A stretch of DNA of 64,000 bases, taken from NCBI RefSeq assembly GCF_028641065.1, contig NC_073387.1:26102001-26166000 (forward strand), given 5' to 3'. This document shows positions 15,476 through 55,486 of the stretch, one piece after another. Made by a program: the position numbers and the translations under genes. The notes under the pieces were generated by a model. That model made no database searches. It was given only the letters and a program-made list of their open reading frames with translations, and was not told the DNA's origin. Numbering within the stretch: the first letter of the stretch is position 1; each line of letters opens with the position of its first letter. The DNA is from Leucoraja erinacea. Lineage: Eukaryota.

Positions 15476-16182
15476 CTAGACCATGTGGGACCCGTTGGGT
15501 CCCTGTCAGCTGGGAGGCCTGGTCCCCCAACGCAATATTCCACCACTCACCCATTACCCCCACGGGAGGCCTGGTCCCCCAACGCAACCCATTCCCCAAC
15601 ATAAGATTCCACCACTCCCCTGCCTCCCCCAGCACTGGACTTAACAAAAAATCCAATTGCACTTCCTCTGCCTAACCCATCACTTCCAATTCCACTTCCA
15701 CTGGCCCCTCCCCCTCCTGTGCTGGCAGGAGCTGGAGTAAGTGTTCGATGATGGCAACATTGTTGCAAATGTCGGGGGACTGTGAGATTCTATTCAGGTG
15801 GAAACTTGGTGGAAGCACAGGGTGTTCCTGGATTGCAACTTTGTATGGAAGTTTGTTGTAAGCTGGGGCTGCAAGGATTTAACAGTAAAAATATTTTTAA
15901 AGTTGGCTTTTATTAACCGTTAAATATCAATAACGAGAAATATAGCATCAAATCTGAAGGAAACCAGACAAGGGCGACGACGGGAAAAAGCCGAGTATGG
16001 TTCCGCAAAAATTTTAGCGCTACTGTGTACATTTTGAGGAAGATATGATCGCATGCACACGCGCGCGCGCATACACACACAGACGCACACACACACAAAC
16101 ACACACAGACGACACACAGAGAAACAGACACACACAGAGAAACACACGCACACAGAAACGCGCGCACACACACAGAAACGCG

Positions 16183-16216
<34 letters not shown>

Positions 16217-16764
16217 AACAAACGCGCGCGCACACACACACAGGAACGCGCGCGCGCACACACAAATGCGCACACACACACACACACACAGAAACGCATG
16301 CGTACGCACACAGAAACGCAAACGTGCACACAGAAACACACACAGAGAAACACAGGTGCCGGCAGACACGCACAGGCTGGCAGGCACACACGCACAGGGA
16401 GGCAGGCACACATGCACAGACACAGAGACACATAGGCACAGGGACACACGACACAGACACACACAGACATGCCGACACACACATGCCGACACACACACAT
16501 GGACGACACAGACACAATGACACAGGCGCACACACACAGAAACACACATAGACAGATACAGACACACACACACAGCCACACGCACACACAGACGTGCACA
16601 GAGAGATAGACGGATACGCACGCAGACACGCACAGAGAGAGACAAATAGACATGCATGCAGACACGCACAGAGAGTGACTGACACACGCACGCAGAGAAA
16701 CGCACAGGCATGGAAACACGCACAGACACACACGCACAGGACGAGACTTAATAGTATATATAGA
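15476..16764 (-). mobile_element. Non-autonomous Helitron
   Basis: On the minus strand: 5' TC start, 3' CTAG end, inserted between A and T with no TSD, and a hairpin GGGACCC-aac-GGGTCCC just upstream of the 3' end (15487-15503). Confidence 0.85.
16053..16740. repeat. Degenerate (CA)n/(CAGA)n microsatellite inside the Helitron
   Basis: Directly visible; source of the CV- and HT-rich pseudo-ORFs. Confidence 0.95.
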
Positions 16765-17719
16765 TTTTGCTGCTTACGGTACATCCTGCGGAGGATTTGG
16801 AGAATGCGGGGTTTTCTTTAAAAATAAATCCAGGAACTCATTCCATCACTTGGATTCCATCTCTTGCTTTGAGACCCTCCCTAAAATCTAGGCCTTTGGT
16901 CACCTAACATCTGCTTTATCATGGTGTCTAATTTCACCAATGTAGGGTTTTATCTGATGACTCAAGATCTTTTTGTATCTGAAAGGGATAATATTAATGC
17001 ATGTTACTACTCCACTCATCACATTGACAAAATTTGTTTCGTTTTCTTAATGGGGACTGCTTGGTCCTTTAGTTTATTTTTTGCTCCTGCTTTGCAGACT
17101 ATAATGCAGATAACTTTGATCCTTATCAATTGGTAGGAATGAATTGGATGCACAGATGTAATTTGAAACAGTGGTTGCTTCAGTGCATCAATGACATTCT
17201 TATGAATTGTTGGATGTGCGTCAGTCATCCTGCTGTTTGGAAGTTTTGATTGCAGAATCTAAATCTCGATTTTTCAAGGTTTATTATGAGAATTGCCCCT
17301 TGTGAGATCATAGAATATCTTAAAGCTAAGACATCTAGACAATTGTTTAGTAAGGTAGTGTAATTTGGCAGCATTATGGAGTGAGCTAGAATCAGTACAT
17401 CAATGTAATTTATAACTCTCTATTCGCGTCCTCTGCTGGTATCACTAATTTTGTGCTTCAATAATGTTACTTGGGAAGTCTTTATATTTAGTATCGTTGG
17501 CTGACTCGGGTGGTGTTTTCTATTCTATCATGTAGGTTATTAGTAAAAACTTGAATAGGTTGAGGCCCCAAAATGCACCATTGCAGATTTTTTGTTCCAA
17601 TCTCTCAGTTTGAGTGACATTCCTCCTTTATACTGCTCAGCAAATTTCATATGCAGGGGAAATAATTTAATTGCCATTCTATGTCCTTCTAATTTAGCTA
17701 CCTATGTTTTATCAAATGC

Positions 17720-22419: not shown

Positions 22420-22471
22420 ATGGTCGTGATTAGTCGTGTGGATCATTTGGCCGTCATATCTCTTATTTTAG
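22420..22471 (+). CDS. TIM/HAVCR-like leader exon, cassette 1 (L1)
   Basis: ATG...TTAG/GTACGT, 52 nt, phase 1, encoding MVVISRVDHLAVISLIL. Homologous to 36750-36801 and joins in frame to the IgV exon. Confidence 0.8.
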
Positions 22472-22853
22472 GTACGTTACTGAGTTAATAATTTGTTTAT
22501 TATATTTGATCGTGTTATTAAAATTCCTTGGACGGCAGTAAATTAGAGGGGTCCGTGGGATACAGACGAGTTACCGTGTGATGCCGGGTCCCGTTGCAAA
22601 ACTTGCTCTTTCCATGTCCTGGGCATGTAAGTTATCACTCGCTTTTGAGTATAAAGCTAAATGGAGATGAACAATAACGCACGCATCACATTCATGCACA
22701 CAAACCATGATTTGATAATATCCCAAATTTGCCGCCCAGTCAGTAAGGGGGTCACTTTCTTGGTGCTGGGATAGGGTTTCACTTCTGTGGACACTCCCTC
22801 TCTCTTCACTCCAGTCAGAGTCAGTTGTCAGTTTCTTTCCCCGATTGTTTCAG

Positions 22854-23201
22854 GTCGAGTGTCCCTTGCCACCGGATCACAAGTGCGAGGATACCCGGGA
22901 CAGGCGATCACTCTGCCGTGCCACTACTCTGTCCGACAGTATGGTAAAACTGCGATGTGCTGGGGTCGGGGACAATGCCCTACCTTTGACTGTGGAGCTG
23001 TGCTGATTAAAACAAACGGAGAAACAGTAACTTCAGCAGGATCCGAGATATATCAGCTTGGTGGTAAAATTAAGGAAGGGGACGTGTCGCTCACGTTAAA
23101 GCAGCTTCGGAAAGAAGACGGTGGGTGGTATTGCTGCCGTGTGGAGATCCCTGGACTGTTTAATGATGTGAAAGTGAATTTGAATCTTCTGGTTTTGGAC
23201 G
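22854..23201 (+). CDS. TIM/HAVCR-family IgV exon, cassette 1 (V1)
   Basis: 348 nt, phase 1-1, tttcag/...G/GTAAG. TIM six-Cys pattern LPCHY, MCWGRGQCPTFDC, YCCRVEIPGLFND (FG-loop MILIBS-like motif). Confidence 0.92.
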
Positions 23202-23769: not shown

Positions 23770-26554
23770 CATAGCAACATAGAAAATAGGTGCAGGAGTA
23801 GACCATTTGGCCCTTCGAGCCAGCACCTCATTCAATATGATCATGGCTGATCATCCAACATCATTACCCCGTTTCGGCTTTTTCCCCATATCCCTTGATT
23901 TCCTTAGCCCCAGGAGCTAAATCTAACATTTGAAAACATCCAGTGAATTGGCCTCCACTGCCTTCTGTGGCAGAGAACTCCACAGATTCAGAACTGGGTG
24001 AAAAAGTTTTTCCTCATCTCAGTCCTAAATGACCTCCCCTTATTCTTAAATTGTGACCCCTGGTTCTGGACTCCCCAAAATCAGGAACATTTTTCCTGCA
24101 TCTACCCTGTCTAATCCTCTAAAAATTGTATATTTTTCTATAAGATACCCTCTCATCCTTCTAAATTCCAGCGAATACAAGCTGGATCCATTCTTTCATC
24201 ATATGTCAGTCCCGCCATCCCGGGAATTAACCTGGTGAACCTACGTTGCACCCCCTCAATAGCAATAATGTCCATCCTCAAATTAGGGGACCAAAATTCC
24301 ACACAATACTCCAGATACGGTCTCACAAGGGCCCTGTACAACTGTAGGAGGACCTCCTTGCTCCTAAACTCAAATCTTCTTGCAATGAAGGCCCACATGC
24401 CATTGGCTTTCTTCGCTGCCTGCTGTACCTGCATGCTTAGTTTCAGTGACTGATGTACAAGCACACCCAGGTCTCATTGCACCACCCCTTCTCCTAATCT
24501 GACACCATTCATATAATAATCTGCATTCCTGTTCTTGCCACCAAAGTGGATAACATCACATTTATCCACATTATACTGCATCTACCATGCTTCTGCCCAC
24601 TCACCCAACCTATCCAAGTCACCCTGCAGCCTCATAGCATCCTCGCAGCTCACACTGCCGCCCAGCTTTGTGTCATCCGCAAACATAGAGATGTTCCATT
24701 TAATTCCCTTGTCTAAATTGTTAATATATATTGTAACCAACTGGGGTTCCAGCACCAAGCCTTGCGGCACCCAACTATTCGCTGCCTGCCATTCTGAAAA
24801 GGACCCGTTAATTCCCACTCTGCTTCCTGTCTGCCAACCAATTCTCTATCCATGTCAATACCCTATCCCCAATACCATGCGCTCTAATTTTGCACACTAA
24901 TCTCTCGTGTGGGACCTTGTCAAAGGCTTTTTGAATGCCCAGATACACCACATCTACTGGCTCTCCCTTATCCATTATACTTGTTACATATAACCATATA
25001 ACCATATAACAATTACAGCACGGAAACAGGCCATCTCGACCCTTCTAGTCCGTGCCGAACACATAATCTCCCCTTGTCCAATATACCTGCGCTCAGACCA
25101 TAACCCTCCATTCCCTTCCCATCGATATAACTATCCAATTTATTTTTAAATGATAAAAACGAACCTGCCTCCACCACCTTCACTGGAAGCTCATTCCACA
25201 CAGCTACCACTCTCTGAGTAAAGAAGTTCCCCCTCATGTTACCCCTAAACTTCAGTCCCTTAATTCTCATGTCATGTCCCCTTGTTTGAATCTTCCCTAC
25301 TCTCAGTGGGAAAAGCTTTTCCACGTCAACTCTGTCTATCCCTCTCATCATTTTAAAAACCTCTATCAAGTCCCCCCTTAACCTTCTGCGCTCCAAAGAA
25401 TAAAGCCCTAACTTGTTCAACCTTTCTCTGTAACTTAGTTGCTGAAACCCAGGCAACATTCTAGTAAATCTCCTCTGTACTCTCTCTATTTTGTTGACAT
25501 CCTTCCTATAATTAGGTGACCAAAATTGTACACCATACTCCAGAATTGGCCTCACCAATGCCTTGTACAATTTTAACATTACATCCCAACTTCTATACTC
25601 AATGCTCTGATTTATAAAGGCCAGCACACCAAAAGCTTTCTTTACCACCCTATCTACATGAGATTCCACTTTCAGGGAACCGTGCACAGTTATTCCCAGA
25701 TCACTCTGTTCACCTACATTCTTCAATTCCCTACCATTTGCCATGTACGTCCTATTTTGATTTGTCCTGCCAAGATGTAGCACCTCACACTTATCAGCAT
25801 TAAACTCCATCTGCCATCTTTCAGCCCACTCTTCCAACTGGCATAAATCTCTCTGTAGACTTTGAAACTCTACTTCATTACCCGCAACCCCACCTATCTT
25901 AGTATCATCTGCATCCTCAAAAAATTTCAAAAGATTAGTCGTATGATTTCCCCTTCATAAATCCATGCTTTTGTTGACTGATCCCATCACTGCTTTACAA
26001 ATGCACTGCTATAACATCTTTAATAATCGACTCCAGCATCTTCCCCACTACCGATGCAAGGCTAACTGGTCTATAATTCCCCATTTTCTCTCTCCCTCCT
26101 TTCTTAAAAAGTTGAGTTACATTGGCCACCCTCCAGTTCACAGGAACTGATCCAGAGTCAAGAGAACATTGGAAAATGATCACAAATGCAGCTACAATTT
26201 CTGGGGCTGCCTCCTTGAGTACTCTGGGATGCAGACCAGCAGGCCCTGGGAATTTATCTGCCTTCAGTCCCAACAATTTACCTTACACCATTTTGCGACT
26301 AATGTGGATTCCCTTCAGTTCCTTCCCACCACTAGATCCTTGGTCACCTAGATTGTTTGTGTCTTCCTTAGTGAAGACAGAACCAAAGTACTTATTTAGC
26401 CTGTTCTGCCATTTCCTAGTTTCCCAATATAAATTCACCTGTCTCTGACTTTAAGGGACCTACATTCGGCATCACTAGTCTTTTCCTATTTACATAGCTG
26501 TAGAAACTTTTACAGTCAGTTTTTATATTCCCCGCAAGCTGTCTTTCATGCTCT

Positions 26555-26605
<51 letters not shown>

Positions 26606-27370
26606 TTAATGAAACCCTCTGGCCAATTTTTGCCTCTTCCTTGGCTTTAACACTATCCTTGATGTCCTTTGTCAGCCGGGTTGAAGAATTTCATCCAGGC
26701 GGTCTTTAAATCTTTGCCATTGCATCTCCACTGTCAACCCTTCAAGTATGATTTGCCAGTCTATCCTAGCCAATTCCCGTCTCATACCTTCAAAGTCTTC
26801 TTTATTCAAATTCAGTAGCCCAGTCTCTGAATTAACTCTGTCACTCCCCATCCTAATGCAGAATTCCACTATATTATGGTCACTGTTGCCCAAGGGGCCT
26901 TGCACAACAAGATTGCTTAATAATCCTTCCTCATTACACAATACCCAGTCTAGGATGGTCTGCCCTCTATTCGGTTCCTCTACATATTGGTACAAAAACC
27001 ATCATGTATACATTCCAGGAAATCCTCCTCCTCGGCACTGCTACCAATTTGGTTGGCCCAATCTATATGTAGATTAAAATCACCCATGATAACTGCTGTA
27101 CCTTTGCTACACCTACTCTAATTTCCTGTTTGATGCTCTGAATACCACTCCAACAAGCATTTTCTGCCCTTGGCTAGTTTGCAGTTCTACCCATACCGAT
27201 TTTACAGCATCCAAACTAATGTCTCTCCTTGCTATTGCATTAATCTCCTCTTTAACCAGCAATGTCACCCCACCTCCTCTTCCTTTCTGTTTATCCTTCC
27301 AGAATATCGCATACCCCTGCATGTTTAGCTCCCAGCCTTGGTCACCGGGAGCCATGTCTTTGTAATTCCA
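23770..27370 (-). mobile_element. CR1-clade LINE (degenerate ORF2) interrupted by a second CR1
   Basis: Endonuclease, RT (FADDTKL) and C-terminal fragments in collinear order, with a 3' tail at ~23770. Confidence 0.88.
24990..25915 (-). mobile_element. Young 5'-truncated CR1 of a different subfamily, nested
   Basis: Uninterrupted ~300-aa RT C-terminal frame starting ADDTKIGG, with a (TATGGTTA)n tail. The host element resumes on both sides. Confidence 0.88.
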
Positions 27371-36560: not shown

Positions 36561-36749
36561 GTGTCCACGTCAAGTAGGAAACAACTCGTAGCCACAGGAC
36601 AGGATGTGCCCCAGCGACAGCTCAGAGAGCGGCCGTGACAGTGCCTTCGAGTCTGAAGAAGGGGCCCGTCCCGGAACGTCACCTATTCCTTCTCTCCAGA
36701 GATGCTGCCTGGCCCGCTGTGTTACTCCAGCACCACAGTGTCCAGCGCG

Positions 36750-36801
36750 ATGGTTGTTACTGGCGGTGTGGCTCATTTGATCGTAGTATCTTTTTTTTTA
36801 G
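36750..36801 (+). CDS. TIM/HAVCR-like leader exon, cassette 2 (L2)
   Basis: 52 nt, MVVTGGVAHLIVVSFFL, TTAG/GTACGT donor, phase 1. Confidence 0.82.
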
Positions 36802-37581
36802 GTACGTTTCCGGTTCAGGAATTGAATTAGTTTGTCAAATCGTGTTATTCAAACTCCCTGGAATGCAGTAGGTGAGATGTGTCTGTGTGTGTGTGTAACT
36901 GAGGAGGTGCAGCCGAGTCACCGAGTGATGCCGGGTCTGATCGTGAGGACGGGCTGGAGTTGAGAAGGTCGAGGGGTGAACTAACGGGATCATTGGGGTT
37001 GAAGTCCAGGTGGGCGCTGATCTGACGGCATAGAGGATATTCGACTACGAATCTGTTCCACTGGTTTTGGCAGTTCAATGGGTTTGTTAACGGACAAATA
37101 GACCAAAGGCTGGAGCTGTGGTCCGAATTGTTTGTCCCGGTTCTACCCGTATCCGGGGAGTTTGGAATCTAATGAAATAAAATGTGAACAAAATGTCAAG
37201 AGAGGAAAATATTTGTCTCCCAGGAGTCATTCAGGGATTACAATGTGTGTCGATCCCTGTCCCATATGTCCCCGTGTCTGTCTCTGAAATTGCTTCACAA
37301 GCCGACAAGCTGAGTCAAAGCTGCTACAGAAATGCAGCGATTGGAGACGGCCGCTCGCCACCAGTTACCCTGGGATAAAGGGGTGGAGGTGGGGGGTAAA
37401 TACTGGATCTGCCTGCAATACACACATCCCGATAAATATAAACCCTTTCACAATACTCCCAATTGCCGCTAACGGTAACGGGCTCATTTTCTCAGCGCTG
37501 GGACCGGGTTGTCACAATGTGGCCACTCCCTTCCTCATCACTCAGCGCCGGCTATAACTGTCTTTTCCCGGACTGTTTCAG

Positions 37582-37929
37582 GTCGAGTGTCCCTTGCCAC
37601 CGGATCAGAAGTGCGAGGATACCCGGGACAGGCGATCACTCTGCCGTGCCACTACTCTGTCCAAATGCATGGTAAAACTGCGATGTGCTGGAGTCGGGGA
37701 AAATGCCCTGCCTCGGGCTGTGGATCTGAACTGATTAAAACAAACGGAGAAACTGTAACTTCAGCAGTATCCGAGAAATATCAGCTTGATGGTAACATTG
37801 AGCAAGGAGACGTGTCGCTCACGATAAAGCAGCTCCGGAAAGAAGACGGCGGCTGGTATTGCTGCCGTGTGAGGAGGCCTGGACCGTTTAATGATGTGAA
37901 AGTGAATTTGAATGTGCTGGTTTTGGATG
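37582..37929 (+). CDS. TIM/HAVCR-family IgV exon, cassette 2 (V2)
   Basis: 348 nt, phase 1-1; MCWSRGKCPASGC, YCCRVRRPGPFND. About 90% nt identity to V1 by manual alignment. Confidence 0.92.
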
Positions 37930-38277
37930 GTAAGCAGCTCAATATTACACGTTTCTGTCTCATTCCTGGCGTCGCAACGATGTTGCTGTTAACAGAGTTT
38001 CCTCACAGCTGTAGTGACCCAGGTTCGATCCTAACCTTCAGTGCCACCTGCGTGGAGTTCGCAGGTTCTCCACCAGTTTCCCCTCGTGTTCTGGTTTTCT
38101 CCCAGGTTCGAAGATGCGAGTGGGTTAAACTGCCTCTTGTGTAGAATAGTGGGGCGCAGATCGACAGGTTCCTGGGATATACGTACTGGATGGATTGCTG
38201 CGAATGTTTGAACAGGTGGCATGGTCTTGTTGGGCTGAATGGCCCTCTTCTGCCCCCTTAGGGAAATATCAAAACAC

Positions 38278-38954: not shown

Positions 38955-38984
38955 TTATTGCATGTCAATCTCCACTTTAAAAAT

Positions 38985-39075
38985 ACCCAAAGACTTGGCT
39001 AGTTTTGTTGCCATGTGGAGATCTTTGGACTGTTTCAAGACGTGAAAGTGAATTTGGACCGTAGGCAGCTCAATG
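38985..39075 (+). pseudogene. Decayed third TIM IgV exon remnant (3' end)
   Basis: tgttgccatgtggagatctttggactgtttcaagacgtgaaagtgaatttggac...gcagctcaat aligns to the V1 3' end and intron start (CCHVEIFGLFQDVKVNL), with an internal deletion and a damaged donor. Confidence 0.75.
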
Positions 39076-39532
39076 TCCTTCTACTTGCTGAATACAGATG
39101 CAAAGTTAGCATTTAGTGCCTCGCAAATACATCCTCTGACTCTTTGGACAACTTCTAGTCCCGTCATCACACACAGTTCCACTTCCAGTGCTTCCCCGAG
39201 ATCAACCAGCTGCACTGTCCCGGCAGACCCATTGCACCCACCACCTTCAGGCTTCCAATCCAAAATAAAATGCTTACTCCAACCCTGTTTTGCCTTTATT
39301 AACGAGTGCACATCAGTAACTCCAATCCAATGGATTATTATGCTTTTTAAATGTGGAAACATCAAAGGCCCTATGAATGTCCAGAAACACCACATCCACT
39401 GGTTCTATATTCTACTCAGTGGGTTAGCTGTGTGTGAGCTGAATGATGCAGTATGTGGCAAAGCAGTGCGTGAGAAAGAATATGTCTTCACTCGCACACG
39501 AGCACAATAAATTATTATTTCTTCTGTTCTAG

Positions 39533-39616
39533 AGATCACCACACCGAATCCTTCAACCACAAATGAGTCTGTCCATGCACAGGATGCAAACTCTGTCAGA
39601 GCTTCTACATTTGAAG
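39533..39616 (+). CDS. TIM-like mucin/stalk exon 1
   Basis: ttctag acceptor, G/GTCAGA donor, 84 nt, phase 1-1. Encodes EITTPNPSTTNESVHAQDANSVRASTFE (S/T/P-rich, one N-glycan sequon). Confidence 0.75.
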
Positions 39617-40180: not shown

Positions 40181-40535
40181 NNNNNNNNNNNNNNNNNNNN
40201 NNNNNNNNNNNNNNNNNNNNNNNNNNNNNNNNNNNNNNNNNNNNNNNNNNNNNNNNNNNNNNNNNNNNNNNNNNNNNNNNNNNNNNNNNNNNNNNNNNNN
40301 NNNNNNNNNNNNNNNNNNNNNNNNNNNNNNNNNNNNNNNNNNNNNNNNNNNNNNNNNNNNNNNNNNNNNNNNNNNNNNNNNNNNNNNNNNNNNNNNNNNN
40401 NNNNNNNNNNNNNNNNNNNNNNNNNNNNNNNNNNNNNNNNNNNNNNNNNNNNNNNNNNNNNNNNNNNNNNNNNNNNNNNNNNNNNNNNNNNNNNNNNNNN
40501 NNNNNNNNNNNNNNNNNNNNNNNNNNNNNNNNNNN
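40181..40535. other. Assembly gap (355 N)
   Basis: Run of N. Confidence 1.
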
Positions 40536-50520: not shown

Positions 50521-50698
50521 TTTCCAAAATCTCAGAAATAATGTCTGTTTTGCCTTATGTGGAAAATTAATGTTAGAATGAATCTTGGAAAATAGTGATG
50601 TTTTGGATCCAAGACCTTCTATACCTTACCTTGTTTTTAGGCACCATAGCGGATTCCTTGCTAGTGATATCAGCCGGAATTGTATTCTTTTTCCTCAG

Positions 50699-50760
50699 GT
50701 ACCCGAGAAATTCTGAGCTCTACAATAACTACGAATGAAATCAACAGTACTTCCGAACAA
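50699..50760 (+). CDS. TIM-like mucin/stalk exon 2
   Basis: tcctcag acceptor, CAA/GTAAGC donor, 62 nt, phase 1-0. Encodes GTREILSSTITTNEINSTSEQ. Confidence 0.8.
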
Positions 50761-50797: not shown

Positions 50798-50989
50798 AAG
50801 GTACACAAAAATGCTGGAGAAACACAGCGGGTGCAGCAGCATTTATGGAGCGAAGGAAATAAGGCAACGTTTCGGCCCGAAACCTTTCTTCAGACTGAAG
50901 AAGGGTTTCGGCCCGAAACGTTGCCTATTTCCTTCGCTCCATAGATGCTGCTGCACCCGCTGAGTTTCTCCAGCATTTTTGTGTACCTT
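50798..50989. repeat. ~190-bp near-perfect palindrome of two inverted Penelope-derived 3' repeats
   Basis: Arms aaggtacacaaaaatgctggag... / ...ctccagcatttttgtgtacctt. Flanking direct repeat tacataaaatctaa at 50786-50799 and 51022-51035. Confidence 0.85.
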
Positions 50990-51103
50990 TGATTTTCCAG
51001 CATCTGCAGTTCCTTCTTAAATACATAAAATCTAAAGTATATCTAGAACATCGAACACTTTTATGCAGGTGTTTTAATGGATGCTGCAATAAATCAGTCT
51101 CTA

Positions 51104-51466: not shown

Positions 51467-52249
51467 ACAGTATCAGTTTTCAATTTTTCTAATTATTCAT
51501 TGGCTTACAGACTTAGTGGCAAAATTCCACAGAAGGGAATGTAGAGCTGCATTTTGAAATGTCTGAAAAAATTAATTATAAATCTGTATGGATATAAATA
51601 CATTTTCATGTAATATGCATTTTATTTTTATGTAATAATCTAAATTGTGGCAATTTATTGAAAGCCTCCTAAAATTACAAGTATGTTTGATCACCTGGTT
51701 TGTTCTTGTCAATTTCTGTTATTAAACTATCCAGAATCCATGGAATTTTGGAGATGGAAAAACACTCCTAGAGTTTAGAAGAATGAGGGGTGACATTGAA
51801 ACATAGAGAATAATAAATTCTTCAATAGAGTGGATGTGGAGACAATGTTTCCACGAGTGGGAGAGTCTAGGACTAGAGGTCATAGCCACAGAATTAAAGA
51901 ACTTCTTTTGGGAAGGAGATGAGGAGACATTTATTTTGTCAAAGGCTGGTGAATCTGTGGAATTCTTTGCCACAGAAGGCTGGGGAGGCCGAGTTAGCGG
52001 ATATTTTTAAGGCAGAGATAGAAACATTTTTGATTAGTACAGGTGTTAGAAGTTATGGGGAGTAGGCAGGAGAATAGGGTTTGGAGGGCGATCTATGATT
52101 CAATCATGATTGATTGGCGGAGTAGACTTGATGGGCCGAATGGCCTTATGACCTTTTGCCCTTATAATGGTCAATGGTTGCAGTACGTGCATTTTAGATT
52201 TAAAATAGTGAAGAAAATCTTGTTCTCTGATTTTGTGTATCTATTTCAG

Positions 52250-52358
52250 GTTCCCGATGACCTGGTAAACATCCTGGTTTCTTATCTTGCCTGGGCAGCC
52301 CGTGTCTTAGTTTTCATCTGCTTTCTTGCAATCACTCTGCTCCTTTTTCAATGGAAAT
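52250..52358 (+). CDS. TIM-like transmembrane exon (Arg in TM)
   Basis: tttcag acceptor, T/GTAAGT donor, phase 0-1. Encodes VPDDLVNILVSYLAWAARVLVFICFLAITLLLFQWK. Confidence 0.88.
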
Positions 52359-53273
52359 GTAAGTGTCACTGTCTGGGAACCTGCTTTTTACTCAAAACAA
52401 TTTGTTGCGATATTTGTGCAAGTTCTTGTTAACATGGAACATACAGTATGACCCTGAGTTTGAGTTGATGCAGGGGAGAAGAATGAATGGTAGGTAAACC
52501 AGAAAATACATTTTAAGAATTAAAATGTACTTTAATACACATGTGAAGAAATAGGAAAGATGTAACCAAATAGATGGGGATTTCAAGGCATCCATACGGC
52601 CAGAGCTATATTGGCCAAGTCCCCTGCCTTTGATGGTGGAGATGAGGAATGGCAGCACATGAGTGGGAGAGTTAAAAGAATGGGAGACTAATGCTAGGAG
52701 GCAGACTCGAGAATGATGCAGGGTTACAATAGGGAGAGGTCATGGATGGGGTGCAGAAATGATTTTAAAGACATGGAGAACAGATATCTAATATCTAATA
52801 GAGGATATCTAATAGAGGTTGGCAATTTAACGAAGCAAGATAAATTGGGGAGAAGGATGTGATATTGGATTAAATGTGGGAAGGAACTATTTCTAAGTGA
52901 AAGTTTATGTAATCTTAGCAATTGTAAGACCCCGCACGAATGTTTTCAAGGTGTTAAAGTAAATTAATGGATATTGAAATTGATATTTTCTAATGAATTG
53001 GGAGAATAGGGTTATATGGCATTGCTAAAACTGAAACTGGATCTTTCAGAATAGAATATAGGAATTACTTCCACACGGAAAGTCTGATAGCAGTTCAGAA
53101 TTTTCAGGTATTAATATTGAATTTATGAAGTTTCTGTTACTCAAAAATCCAAATCAATATTGGGAACATTTTATGCTTCAGGTTAATATATAATTTTGGT
53201 GAAGCATACTTGAAAGATCATTAATATTTTGAAACAATCGAAGATCGTTAAAATTTTTGTTTCTGATTCATAG

Positions 53274-53308
53274 GTAAACAAACAGAAAATGAACATCTTT
53301 CATCGTAG
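53274..53308 (+). CDS. TIM-like terminal cytoplasmic exon
   Basis: tttgtttctgattcatag acceptor, phase 1, gives CKQTENEHLSS*. AATAAA at 53587 and 53595, possibly within a repeat tail. Confidence 0.65.
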
Positions 53309-54120
53309 AAGTGTTTCATTCATTCTGTAATAGTTCTATGCTTTCTCATCACCACACCATGCACAGCAACCTCTATAGTTCAAGCAGAACATCGAAGGTC
53401 CATTCACCAATGTTCTGCAATCTTTGCTCAGGCTCAAACTTCACTTTTGTGAACAAGAACAGCATGGATTGCAAGAGAGACTCCATATACTGGCTGCTGC
53501 CCCACTCAAAAGGCATTGCGTTAGTGAACTGAAGATTGGTCATATATTTGTATTATTATTTTTATTTAATTCTTTATTTCGAACAGAATAAAAGAATAAA
53601 AAGCCAGTGTGAAACAGCATACAAAAAACAAAACAAGAGTATTTATAAAGTGTCATAAACATATCTATAAATAAATGAAATTGTATGTGTCCGAAAAGGA
53701 GCAGGAAGAAGCCAAAGCTTATCAATTCCCACTCCTTATTCAACTGCTTATAATTGTAAATAAGTTTGTTTGTATGAACTTTTCTTCTGGGGTTCTGCTC
53801 TGTGACAGTGTACCCAAAGTAGCAGGTCATTGCTTAACTAATATGCTTCGATGTAATTGAGGCTGGCTTCAGCAGACATTTGCAAGTGTAAATATAAGAG
53901 AGTGTATAGAAGTACTCATTAACTACGCGTACTTTTAGTGTACTGATAACTTTTCTCAATCAAAGCATCTTTGTTGTGCTAATGTTTGCAGAACAAACAT
54001 GCCTATATTAGGCGAGAAGGACAATTGATAAAGAAATTGGCAATCAAAATGTCATGGTTATTATTTTTAATTTATAGGTAAAGTGGGCTTAGGCACATGG
54101 AGCAACTTGTGAAGAGCATA

Positions 54121-54365: not shown

Positions 54366-55486
54366 TGATATACACCAGTTAATGTATATTGGTATAAATG
54401 TATATCATGTATTACATGTATAAATGGTTCTTACTTTCGGAAACATGGTTAATTAACTGGTGGCATTATTCCCTGTCCTAATGGCCTTTGTTTTAGCTGG
54501 TGATTACATCTAATCCATCCCTCCCTTCCAAAGATGTGGGATTTCAATTTGAGCGCACTTGTTTGAATAGATGCAAGCGGCATGTCCAGCCTCTCTCCTG
54601 GGCGCGCAATACACGAGGCCGATGAAATGACACAACTGTCACACCAAAGATAGATACAAAATGCTGGAGTAACTTAGCTGAAGAGGCAGCATCTCTGGAG
54701 AGAAGGAATGGGTGGCGTTTCGGGTCGAGATCCTTCAGATGCACGCTGAAGAATGGTCTCGGCACGAAACGTCATCCAAACCAGCAAAGTATTAAAAAAA
54801 AACAAGTAAATTGGCAAAATATACAAACTGGGATAATAGAGCTTGTACATAAAGGATGGAGAGAAGAAACTCAAGTAAATGTCAGGGGACGACCTGTAGA
54901 TTTGCTCCGACATTGTACACATTGGAAGCACCAAACTGGGTTTCACCAAGTTGATTTCTGTGATAAATGGGTTTGCTTGAAGGAAAGATTGAAGTTTAGA
55001 TGAATGAGAGATGATATGAATGAATCACACGATTGAAGTGGCTTGGCAAAGAAAATGTTTACCCTCACAGAAGAGCCTCAAATAAGATGAGCATGACGAG
55101 GAATGTTTTTCTTTCAGTGGACTTTGAAATTCTTTATCCCAAAGTACTGTGGAAGTTATAACAAGGAATATTATGAAAACATAGATGGATAGATTTTTGT
55201 TTGGGAGGAGAGCAAAGGGATATAGAAAAAAGACAGGATGGTGATGTCCAAAATCAATTTAGCCTTGATGCCATCTAATGCTGAAACAAGATTGAGACAC
55301 CGCAGCCTACTCTTGCTTCTATTTCTTGATCTTAATCACAAAAAGAAGGGTATGCCACTTGTCTCTAAATACATGCAGATGTTTAGTACATAATGAAATT
55401 CTGTTAAACATTTGTAACTAAATTAAATTCGCATTAACCTCAAAATTGCACTCAGTAAAAGGAATGAGTATGAACTTGAAAATTAC

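What the first reader, a model, noticed from the sequence alone, without database searches (positions are those of the whole stretch)
52250..53308. Activating-receptor signature in a TIM protein: transmembrane Arg and a 15-residue tyrosine-free tail
Seen: the TM segment YLAWAA-R-VLVFICFLAITLLLF is followed by QWKCKQTENEHLSS*. The Arg lies in the outer part of the hydrophobic stretch, followed by 15 apolar residues. Established: an Arg at this position plus a short tail is how FcalphaRI, GPVI, NKp46, OSCAR and LILRA receptors pair with ITAM adaptors (FcR-gamma/CD3-zeta). Mammalian TIM-1 and TIM-3 signal through their own cytoplasmic tyrosines and are not known to use a charged TM residue. Inference: this is an adaptor-coupled activating TIM-like receptor, possibly one half of a paired activating/inhibitory system.
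Basis: partly seen in the sequence, partly recalled or inferred. Interest (0 to 1): 0.85.

Follow-up and report, generated by a model that had tools for sequence, protein, structure and literature searches.

The report
Skate TIM receptor with membrane arginine
The little skate carries a TIM-family immune receptor whose membrane anchor holds an arginine, conserved in every shark and ray copy examined, followed by a very short tail; this is the usual design of receptors that signal through a separate partner chain, a design not described for TIM proteins, but the partner has not been identified.

Summary
Window 52250-52358 (+) is the transmembrane exon and 53274-53308 the last coding exon of a little skate (Leucoraja erinacea) gene that NCBI annotates as 'TIM-4-like' isoform X1. 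One spliced transcript contig supports the chain stalk, TM, short tail.

Arg216 (52301-52303) lies about five residues inside the hydrophobic core. It is invariant in 10 of 10 elasmobranch homologues (5 ray and 4 shark species). It sits on the one helical face that is conserved (R, V+3, F+7, I+10/T+11, L+14, W+17).

Mobula hypostoma and Heptranchias perlo also have a counterpart with about 90-100% identical IgV but an uncharged TM and an EEN[IV]Y tail. That is the pattern of a paired receptor.

Caveats:
- A second annotated last exon (53432-53532) gives a 36-residue tail with an ITIM-like SIYWLL. This Tyr is Pro in rays.
- The tail is 14 residues, not 15.
- No classical partner gene lies in this window.
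- Adaptor binding is an inference; no adaptor could be fetched or tested.

TIM homologues with a basic TM residue also occur in frogs, a caecilian and teleosts. Earlier first-reader notes flag TM arginines in other, unrelated skate receptors, but not in this gene on other DNA.

Verdict: a real, conserved, apparently undescribed TIM variant of a well-known receptor design.

The parts
36702..36801 (+). Exon 1: start codon and signal peptide (aa 1-33, plus the first base of codon 34)
   Evidence: tblastn of P0002 aa 1-34 at 100% identity; donor AG|GTACGT
37582..37929 (+). Exon 2: TIM-type IgV domain with six cysteines and the FG-loop motif PFND
   Evidence: 100% identity to P0002 aa 34-149. PDB TIM-4 E=8e-31. 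Model matches Tim-1 2or8 with TM 0.92 and rmsd 1.1 A.
39533..39616 (+). Exon 3: first Ser/Thr-rich stalk exon, skipped in isoform X2
   Evidence: tblastn of P0002 aa 150-178 at 100% identity; absent from P0001
50699..50760 (+). Exon 4: second stalk exon
   Evidence: tblastn at 100% identity; piece of the run X1 contig ends at 50760
52250..52358 (+). Exon 5: juxtamembrane helix plus transmembrane segment (aa 199-235)
   Evidence: Sequence; tblastn at 100% identity; the spliced X1 contig covers exactly 52250-52358; AF2 helix 201-244 with pLDDT 81-93
52301..52303 (+). CGT codon of Arg216, the transmembrane arginine
   Evidence: Sequence; invariant in 10/10 elasmobranch homologues
52289..52348 (+). 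Inferred 20-residue hydrophobic core, A212-F231 (AWAARVLVFICFLAITLLLF)
   Evidence: Counted back 20 residues from the conserved W233-K234 cytoplasmic boundary; best Kyte-Doolittle 21-mer. The boundaries are an inference.
53274..53308 (+). Exon 6a: short tail (C)KQTENEHLSS and stop codon (53306-53308); isoform X1
   Evidence: Sequence; P0002; depth arithmetic on the X1 contig; similar short tails in sharks
53432..53532 (+). Exon 6b: alternative acceptor in the same terminal region; tail (C)SNFTFVNKNSMDCKRDSIYWLLPHSKGIALVN and stop codon; isoform X2
   Evidence: P0001 aa 208-239 at 100% identity; homologous to ray tails ...N[KR]N...RDSI; no reads found on it here
53587..53600 (+). Two overlapping-range AATAAA hexamers (53587-53592 and 53595-53600), a possible polyadenylation signal
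   Evidence: Read from the sequence; not verified by reads

Best explanation
This is the 3' end of a skate TIM-family gene of a distinct, elasmobranch-wide 'type II' class. Its parts are a TIM IgV that keeps the Asn-Asp lipid/metal site, a short Ser/Thr-rich stalk, a transmembrane helix with an invariant arginine in its upper third, and a tail of about 10-14 residues with no signalling motif. The most likely mechanism is that Arg216 pairs inside the membrane with the two aspartates of a disulphide-linked signalling dimer, a CD3-zeta/FcR-gamma-type 'RDD' assembly (DAP10/DAP12-type is less likely). Ligand binding by the IgV would then be converted into ITAM signalling. The classical 'type I' TIMs of the same animals instead signal through their own EEN[IV]Y tail. 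Shown here: gene structure, transcript support for the short tail, invariance and position of the Arg, a conserved helical face that includes it, and paired type I/type II forms in two other species. Inferred: membrane depth, adaptor pairing, the activating outcome and the ligand.
For: Exon chain and identity to annotated protein P0002. A spliced contig joins stalk, TM and short-tail exons. The Arg is invariant in 10/10 homologues from 5 ray and 4 shark species. The TM core is 53-74% identical to skate, against 6-29% for the stalk and 42-64% for the IgV. The invariant columns R0, V+3, F+7, I+10, T+11, L+14, W+17 and K+18 show helical periodicity that peaks at 100 degrees (permutation p=0.0034). 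The conserved face points within 28 degrees of the Arg. AF2 gives one continuous helix, 201-244, through the Arg. Only 15 apolar residues follow the Arg, too few to span a bilayer, so the Arg must be buried. The same species carry both forms: in Mobula hypostoma, P0007 (classical TM, EENIYQISE tail) and P0009 (Arg-TM) have about 90% identical IgV; in Heptranchias perlo, 83/83 IgV residues are identical before the two diverge. Among 78 TIM-family representatives with a TM, the 15 with a basic core residue have shorter tails (median 14 vs 43 aa, p=1.7e-4) and rarely the xN[IV]Y motif (1/15 vs 24/63, p=0.028). A review states that an Arg near the top of the TMD is how CD89, NKp30, NKp46 and TCR-alpha assemble with gamma/zeta dimers, and that a correctly placed basic residue can suffice.
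Against: No adaptor was identified or tested, and none could be fetched with the tools available. A 2014 survey found no FcR-gamma homologue in shark genomes, though the assemblies were old. Annotated isoform X2 has a 36-residue tail with an ITIM-like SIYWLL. Three RNA-seq runs showed zero depth on the TM exon, so expression evidence rests on one low-depth contig. For adaptor pairing a single basic residue is reported to suffice, so the strong conservation of a whole helical face goes beyond what that model requires and could indicate a different partner. Mammalian TIM-4 works as a tether with no signalling tail, so a short tail alone does not imply activation. No type I partner exon lies in this window.
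Confidence: 0.55

Rival explanations
1. This is a non-signalling tether or decoy. Like mammalian TIM-4, it only holds ligand-bearing particles. The Arg snorkels to the outer head-group region and merely sets the depth or tilt of the helix, and no partner chain is involved.
For: The tail is short and has no motif. The Arg is only about five residues from the outer edge of the core, within snorkelling range. TIM-4 is known to lack a signalling tail (established knowledge).
Against: The Arg is invariant across the shark-ray split. It sits on a conserved helical face that continues through the whole membrane to W+17, which is hard to explain without helix-helix packing. The family-wide link between a basic TM residue and loss of the tyrosine tail fits a division of labour.
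Confidence: 0.2
2. The Arg-bearing helix does pack against a membrane partner, but the partner is not an ITAM adaptor. Candidates are a classical type I TIM, another receptor chain, or a DAP10-like YxxM chain. The output would then be modulatory or phagocytic rather than ITAM activation.
For: A whole helical face is conserved, which is more than the single basic residue said to suffice for adaptor assembly. FcR-gamma was reported absent from sharks.
Against: An Arg in the top half of a type I TMD followed by a short tail is the described zeta/gamma pattern. CD3-zeta should exist in all jawed vertebrates that have a TCR (established knowledge, not tested here).
Confidence: 0.15
3. The main product is isoform X2. 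Its tail carries S-I-Y-W-L-L, an ITIM-like motif, so the protein would be inhibitory, or dual-function in the manner of KIR2DL4 (TM Arg plus ITIM).
For: NCBI models X2 with exon 6b. The exon is homologous to the tail used in ray homologues. The motif fits S/I/V/L-x-Y-x-x-I/V/L.
Against: The Tyr is Pro in all five ray sequences (RDSIPLQQ). Sharks have only 6-10 residue tails after WKC. Hypanus shows three different tails after the same TM exon. The only transcript evidence found here uses exon 6a, and no reads fell on 53352-53515.
Confidence: 0.1

Closest known systems
Fc-alpha-RI (CD89), NKp46 and NKp30: type I Ig receptors with an Arg near the top of the TMD that assemble with FcR-gamma/CD3-zeta dimers (RDD motif)
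   Same: Type I Ig-superfamily receptor. [quoted passage not shown]
   Different: The ectodomain belongs to a different family (TIM IgV, not C2-type LRC domains). The helix continues about 15 residues above the Arg as a hydrophobic/amphipathic extension. Association with any adaptor has not been shown.
CD300b/LMIR5, a DAP12-coupled activating receptor of the CD300 family that binds TIM-1, TIM-4 and phosphatidylserine (PMC2901072)
   Same: A single IgV receptor for lipid or apoptotic-cell signals, with a charged TM residue, a short tail, and inhibitory or tail-signalling relatives with similar ectodomains.
   Different: CD300b uses a central Lys and DAP12. Its IgV is only a distant structural relative; CD300lf and TREM2 rank far below the TIMs in the fold search.
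Mammalian TIM-4 (TIMD4)
   Same: It is the best PDB sequence match for the IgV (E=8e-31), with six cysteines and the FG-loop xFND. It has a mucin-type stalk and a tail with no tyrosine signalling motif.
   Different: TIM-4-like representatives in the survey have an uncharged TM (LLMIIAPSLGF...) and a tail of about 43 residues. The skate stalk is only 49 residues. The FG tip is P-F where TIM-4 has W-F.
Classical elasmobranch 'type I' TIMs (Mobula hypostoma P0007, Chiloscyllium P0036, Heptranchias P0186) and mammalian TIM-1/TIM-3
   Same: Same IgV type, about 90-100% identical within a species. Same overall layout.
   Different: They have an uncharged TM and a 33-34 residue tail ending in EEN[IV]Y, the motif also seen in the bird, frog and mammal homologues retrieved here. 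The skate gene has neither.
KIR2DL4
   Same: From memory, not tested here: a TM Arg that couples to FcR-gamma, together with an ITIM in the tail. This is the format isoform X2 would have.
   Different: Unrelated ectodomain. The skate ITIM-like Tyr is not conserved in rays.

Membership tests
TIM family (HAVCR1/HAVCR2/TIMD4) | IgV domain with six conserved cysteines (three disulphides) | tested here: met
   All six Cys align with TIM-4 and TIM-1 in the PDB. C56, C69, C80 and C128 are invariant or nearly invariant in alignment A1.
TIM family (HAVCR1/HAVCR2/TIMD4) | TIM IgV fold with the CC'/FG cleft | tested here: met
   The top 19 Foldseek hits are all TIM-1, -2, -3 or -4. Tim-1 2or8 gives TM 0.92 and rmsd 1.1 A over 112 columns.
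TIM family (HAVCR1/HAVCR2/TIMD4) | FG-loop Asn-Asp of the metal-ion-dependent ligand (phosphatidylserine) site | tested here: met
   F136, N137 and D138 align with WFND of TIM-4 and are at least 90% conserved. The tip residue is Pro instead of Trp/Leu. Binding itself was not tested.
TIM family (HAVCR1/HAVCR2/TIMD4) | Ser/Thr-rich mucin stalk | tested here: met
   Residues 150-198 contain 18 Ser/Thr out of 49 and NxS/T sites. This is short compared with mammalian TIM-1 and TIM-4.
TIM family (HAVCR1/HAVCR2/TIMD4) | Uncharged TM plus a cytoplasmic tail with the xEN[IV]Y tyrosine motif (TIM-1/TIM-3 type) | tested here: not met
   The TM holds Arg216. The tail is 14 residues with no Tyr (X1), or has a non-homologous SIYWLL (X2). 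No such exon is present in the window.
Adaptor-coupled activating Ig receptors (RDD/KDD assembly) | Basic residue buried in the TM helix (upper half for zeta/gamma) | tested here: met
   The Arg is followed by only 15 apolar residues and then QWK. The helix is continuous from 201 to 244, and the Arg is the 5th residue of a 20-residue core. Depth is inferred from geometry, not measured.
Adaptor-coupled activating Ig receptors (RDD/KDD assembly) | The basic residue is conserved among orthologues | tested here: met
   10/10 elasmobranch sequences from 9 species.
Adaptor-coupled activating Ig receptors (RDD/KDD assembly) | Short cytoplasmic tail with no signalling motif | tested here: inconclusive
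   Met for isoform X1 and for the shark homologues (6-14 residues). Isoform X2 has an ITIM-like motif whose Tyr is not conserved.
Adaptor-coupled activating Ig receptors (RDD/KDD assembly) | Physical association with an Asp-bearing dimeric adaptor, and surface expression or signalling that depends on it | not testable with these tools
The literature on FcR-gamma in sharks is negative but dated.
Paired activating/inhibitory receptor systems | A counterpart in the same genome with a near-identical ectodomain but a different TM and tail | tested here: inconclusive
   Met in Mobula hypostoma (about 90% IgV identity) and Heptranchias perlo (83/83 residues). Not shown for the skate: the second IgV in the window (22853-23200, 81% identical) has no detectable TM or tail exon of its own.

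The most novel reading that the evidence does not exclude
TIM receptors originally came as a pair: a tail-signalling form and an adaptor-coupled form with a transmembrane basic residue. The adaptor-coupled form would survive in sharks, rays, amphibians and teleosts but would have been lost in the amniote lineages sampled here. In that case, sensing of phosphatidylserine or apoptotic cells by TIMs in most vertebrates could directly drive ITAM signalling through a zeta/gamma-type chain. The elasmobranch version would use an unusually extended, conserved helix-helix interface.
Probability: 0.3. Interest if true: 0.7.

Novelty: new variant of a known kind. Interest (0 to 1): 0.55.

Why it matters
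TIM-1, TIM-3 and TIM-4 are major phosphatidylserine receptors and checkpoint molecules. How they signal is still debated and is always discussed in terms of their own tails or of tethering. A conserved TIM class built like an adaptor-coupled receptor, paired with classical TIMs in the same genomes, would add the TIM family to the list of paired immune receptor families. It would date that arrangement to at least the common ancestor of sharks and rays. It also gives a direct handle, a single Arg, for asking which ITAM adaptors work in cartilaginous fish, where FcR-gamma has been reported missing. The claim can be tested with routine co-expression assays.

Tried and rejected
- **GPI-anchor signal instead of a TM:** rejected. 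A conserved W-K stop-transfer and a 9-36 residue hydrophilic tail follow the hydrophobic segment in all homologues.
- **Word-based search with the TM/tail region (aa 196-245):** found only the two skate isoforms.
- **ESM Atlas feature search of the same region:** no usable hit.
- **Homology of the frog, caecilian and teleost basic-TM forms to the elasmobranch TM exon:** unresolved. An HMM of the exon gives 69-77 bits for elasmobranchs. The best outside hit is Hyperolius P0159 at 6.8 bits (E=0.033 among 188 sequences).
- **Three raw-read RNA runs (X7, X11, X14):** zero depth on the TM and tail exons. Their coverage in the stretch comes from repeats. This says nothing about silence.
- **A classical TM or EEN[IV]Y tail exon in the window:** none found by tblastn with 188 homologues or by a motif scan.
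- **An annotated skate protein containing the upstream IgV (22853-23200):** none in the 103-327 aa range.
- **Literature searches for a charged-TM TIM or for TIMs in cartilaginous fish:** nothing relevant. The search for shark DAP12/FcR-gamma papers also returned nothing relevant.
- **Joined spliced model:** none was sent to any search tool. Exons were searched by reference, and the database protein P0002 stood in for the joined product. One script concatenated provisional exon coordinates only to check the reading frame; the result was not saved or searched.

Full report
**Where the window comes from and what the gene is**

The IgV-coding ORF at 37479-38141 is 100% identical to two NCBI models from Leucoraja erinacea (little skate). 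[quoted passage not shown]

Exon-wise tblastn and inspection of the splice sites give this + strand structure:
- e1: 36702-36801
- e2 (IgV): 37582-37929
- e3: 39533-39616
- e4: 50699-50760
- e5 (TM): 52250-52358
- e6a: 53274-53308

Isoform X2 skips e3 and uses an alternative acceptor at 53432 (e6b, 53432-53532). Exons were searched by reference and the database protein P0002 stood in for the joined product.

**Checking the observation**

- e5 encodes VPDDLVNILVSYLAWAARVLVFICFLAITLLLFQWK, and e6a completes Cys and adds KQTENEHLSS plus a stop codon.
- The post-membrane stretch is 14 residues, not 15.
- Transcript support: a 196-nt contig in public run X1 lies on 50696-50760 and 52250-52358, which are exact exon ends. 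Its remaining 22 nt reproduce exactly the depth of 0.41 in bin 53188-53351. No depth falls in 53352-53515. The contig therefore joins stalk, TM and short-tail exons.
- Three raw-read RNA runs gave zero depth on these exons. Expression is low or tissue-restricted in what could be sampled.

**TIM-family membership of the ectodomain**

- The IgV matches solved TIM-4 and TIM-1 IgV domains at E of about 1e-30. All six cysteines align, and the FG-loop xFND aligns with WFND.
- An AlphaFold2 model built on 36 homologues (mean pLDDT 77.5, IgV blocks mostly 93-98) matches Tim-1 with TM-score 0.92 and rmsd 1.1 A. The top 19 structural hits are all TIMs.
- The stalk is short (49 aa) and 37% Ser/Thr.
- The protein is therefore a TIM by every ectodomain criterion, but it lacks the TIM-1/TIM-3-type tail.

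**The transmembrane arginine**

*Position.* The model shows one continuous helix from residue 201 to 244, with pLDDT 81-93 through the membrane part. Fifteen residues (about 22 A) cannot span a bilayer. Counting 20 residues back from the conserved W233-K234 boundary puts the core at A212-F231. The Arg is then the fifth residue, in the upper third. This depth is an inference from geometry.

*Conservation.* I recovered homologues with the same exon from five batoids and four sharks:
- Batoids: Leucoraja, Hemitrygon akajei, Hypanus sabinus, Mobula birostris, Mobula hypostoma.
- Sharks: Scyliorhinus canicula, S. torazame, Mustelus asterias, Heptranchias perlo.

They align without gaps through the exon, and the Arg is invariant in 10/10 sequences.

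*Strength of conservation.* The R-to-K core is 53-74% identical to skate. The IgV is 42-64% identical and the stalk 6-29%. For a membrane anchor this is unusual.

*Conserved face.* The invariant columns are R0, V+3, F+7, I+10, T+11, L+14, W+17 and K+18, a spacing of 3-4 residues. Conservation has a helical moment that peaks at 100 degrees per residue (permutation p=0.0034). The conserved face points within 28 degrees of the Arg. The Arg therefore belongs to a conserved helix-helix packing surface. The sample is nine distinct, related sequences, so the p-value is indicative only.

**Tails**

- Sharks and the skate X1 form have 6-11 residues after W-K, such as CKYPTT, CNYPAKEILS, CTFLTKELLS and CKQTENEHLSS. 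These look homologous.
- Rays use a 25-residue tail, RTSSICLNRNNTKPIRDSIPLQQSL. It is homologous to skate e6b through the shared N[KR]N and RDSI.
- The skate Tyr in SIYWLL, which fits an ITIM consensus, is Pro in all ray sequences.
- Hypanus has three different tails after the same TM exon.
- The conserved unit is thus the TM exon, not the tail. The ITIM-like motif is probably fortuitous, but it remains a caveat.

**Pairing with classical TIMs**

Elasmobranchs also have 'type I' TIMs with an uncharged TM and a tail of about 33 residues ending in EEN[IV]Y. The same motif appears in bird, frog and mammal homologues.
- In Mobula hypostoma the type I (P0007) and type II (P0009) proteins are about 90% identical through signal peptide and IgV, then diverge completely.
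- In Heptranchias perlo 83/83 IgV residues are identical before the two diverge.

This is the signature of paired receptor families. In the skate window itself I found no type I exon.

**Survey across the family**

A HMMER search of 1.8 billion representatives gave 1126 hits. I examined the best 150; of these and the query, 78 proteins of 450 aa or less have a predicted TM.
- 15 of the 78 have Arg or Lys in the core. Besides elasmobranchs these include frogs (Hyla, Dendropsophus, Engystomops, Lithobates, Hyperolius), a caecilian and teleosts.
- Their tails are shorter (median 14 vs 43 aa, p=1.7e-4).
- They rarely carry the xN[IV]Y motif (1/15 vs 24/63, p=0.028).
- A few of the 15 may be annotation artefacts.
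- Whether these forms share one origin is unresolved.

**Mechanism**

A recent review (PMC13107469) makes three relevant points:
- CD89 binds FcR-gamma dimers through an Arg near the top of its TMD.
- NKp30 and NKp46 are assumed to do the same with zeta/gamma, while DAP12 receptors use a central Lys.
- A correctly placed basic residue can suffice for assembly, and unassembled chains are retained in the ER.

By these rules Arg216 predicts a zeta/gamma-type partner. Akula et al. 2014 (PMC4016189) found no FcR-gamma in shark genomes. CD3-zeta, which is expected wherever a TCR exists, or an unrecognised gamma-like chain is therefore the leading candidate. None of this could be tested here.

The closest functional analogue is CD300b, a DAP12-coupled IgV receptor of the phosphatidylserine/TIM axis (PMC2901072).

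**Verdict**

I found no paper describing a charged-TM TIM, although the gene models are in public annotation. I file it as a new variant of a known kind, with moderate interest.

Noticed in passing
window 22420-23200 (+): A second, intact-looking leader exon (22420-22471, MVVISRVDHLAVISLILG, with the same TTAG|GTACGT donor) and a second IgV exon (22853-23200, 81% identical to the downstream IgV, FG loop LFND) lie 14 kb upstream. No stalk, TM or tail exon of their own is detectable, and no matching annotated skate protein of 103-327 aa was found. Both IgV exons are phase 1-1. The cassette could therefore splice to the shared downstream exons, or give a two-IgV form like Hypanus sabinus P0014 (327 aa, 'pIgR-like', same Arg-TM).
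   Followed up: partly
window 38964-39092 (+): A decayed partial IgV fragment covering the F-G strand region, ...FCCHVEIFGLFQDVKVNL. It has an in-frame stop codon and FQD instead of FND. It lies between the IgV exon and the first stalk exon and is probably a remnant of an exon duplication.
   Followed up: partly
proteins P0012, P0013, P0015-P0017: Frogs (Pristimantis, Hyperolius) encode proteins with four or five tandem TIM-type IgV domains, annotated 'polymeric immunoglobulin receptor-like'. Multi-domain TIM-IgV proteins seem common outside mammals.
   Followed up: no
window 50892-51055, 51876-52203, 54500-54827: Interspersed repeats in the introns and downstream of the gene have RNA-read depths in the hundreds to thousands at 95-99% identity, in all RNA runs. 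Many reads join 50997 to about 54641-54687 on opposite strands, so these are inverted copies of one abundant, transcribed repeat family.
   Followed up: no
window 40181-40535: A run of 355 N (assembly gap or masked) inside the long intron between the two stalk exons.
   Followed up: no
window 15916-16817 (-) and 26433-26706 (+): A long TG/CA-type microsatellite (it reads as VCVCVC ORFs) and a CCN/poly-Pro-coding simple repeat. Both are low-complexity sequence, not genes.
   Followed up: no
proteins P0003, P0004 (Amblyraja radiata): The thorny skate models of the orthologous gene end by read-through after a stalk exon (162 and 207 aa, no TM). They are either secreted isoforms or incomplete annotation.
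   Followed up: no
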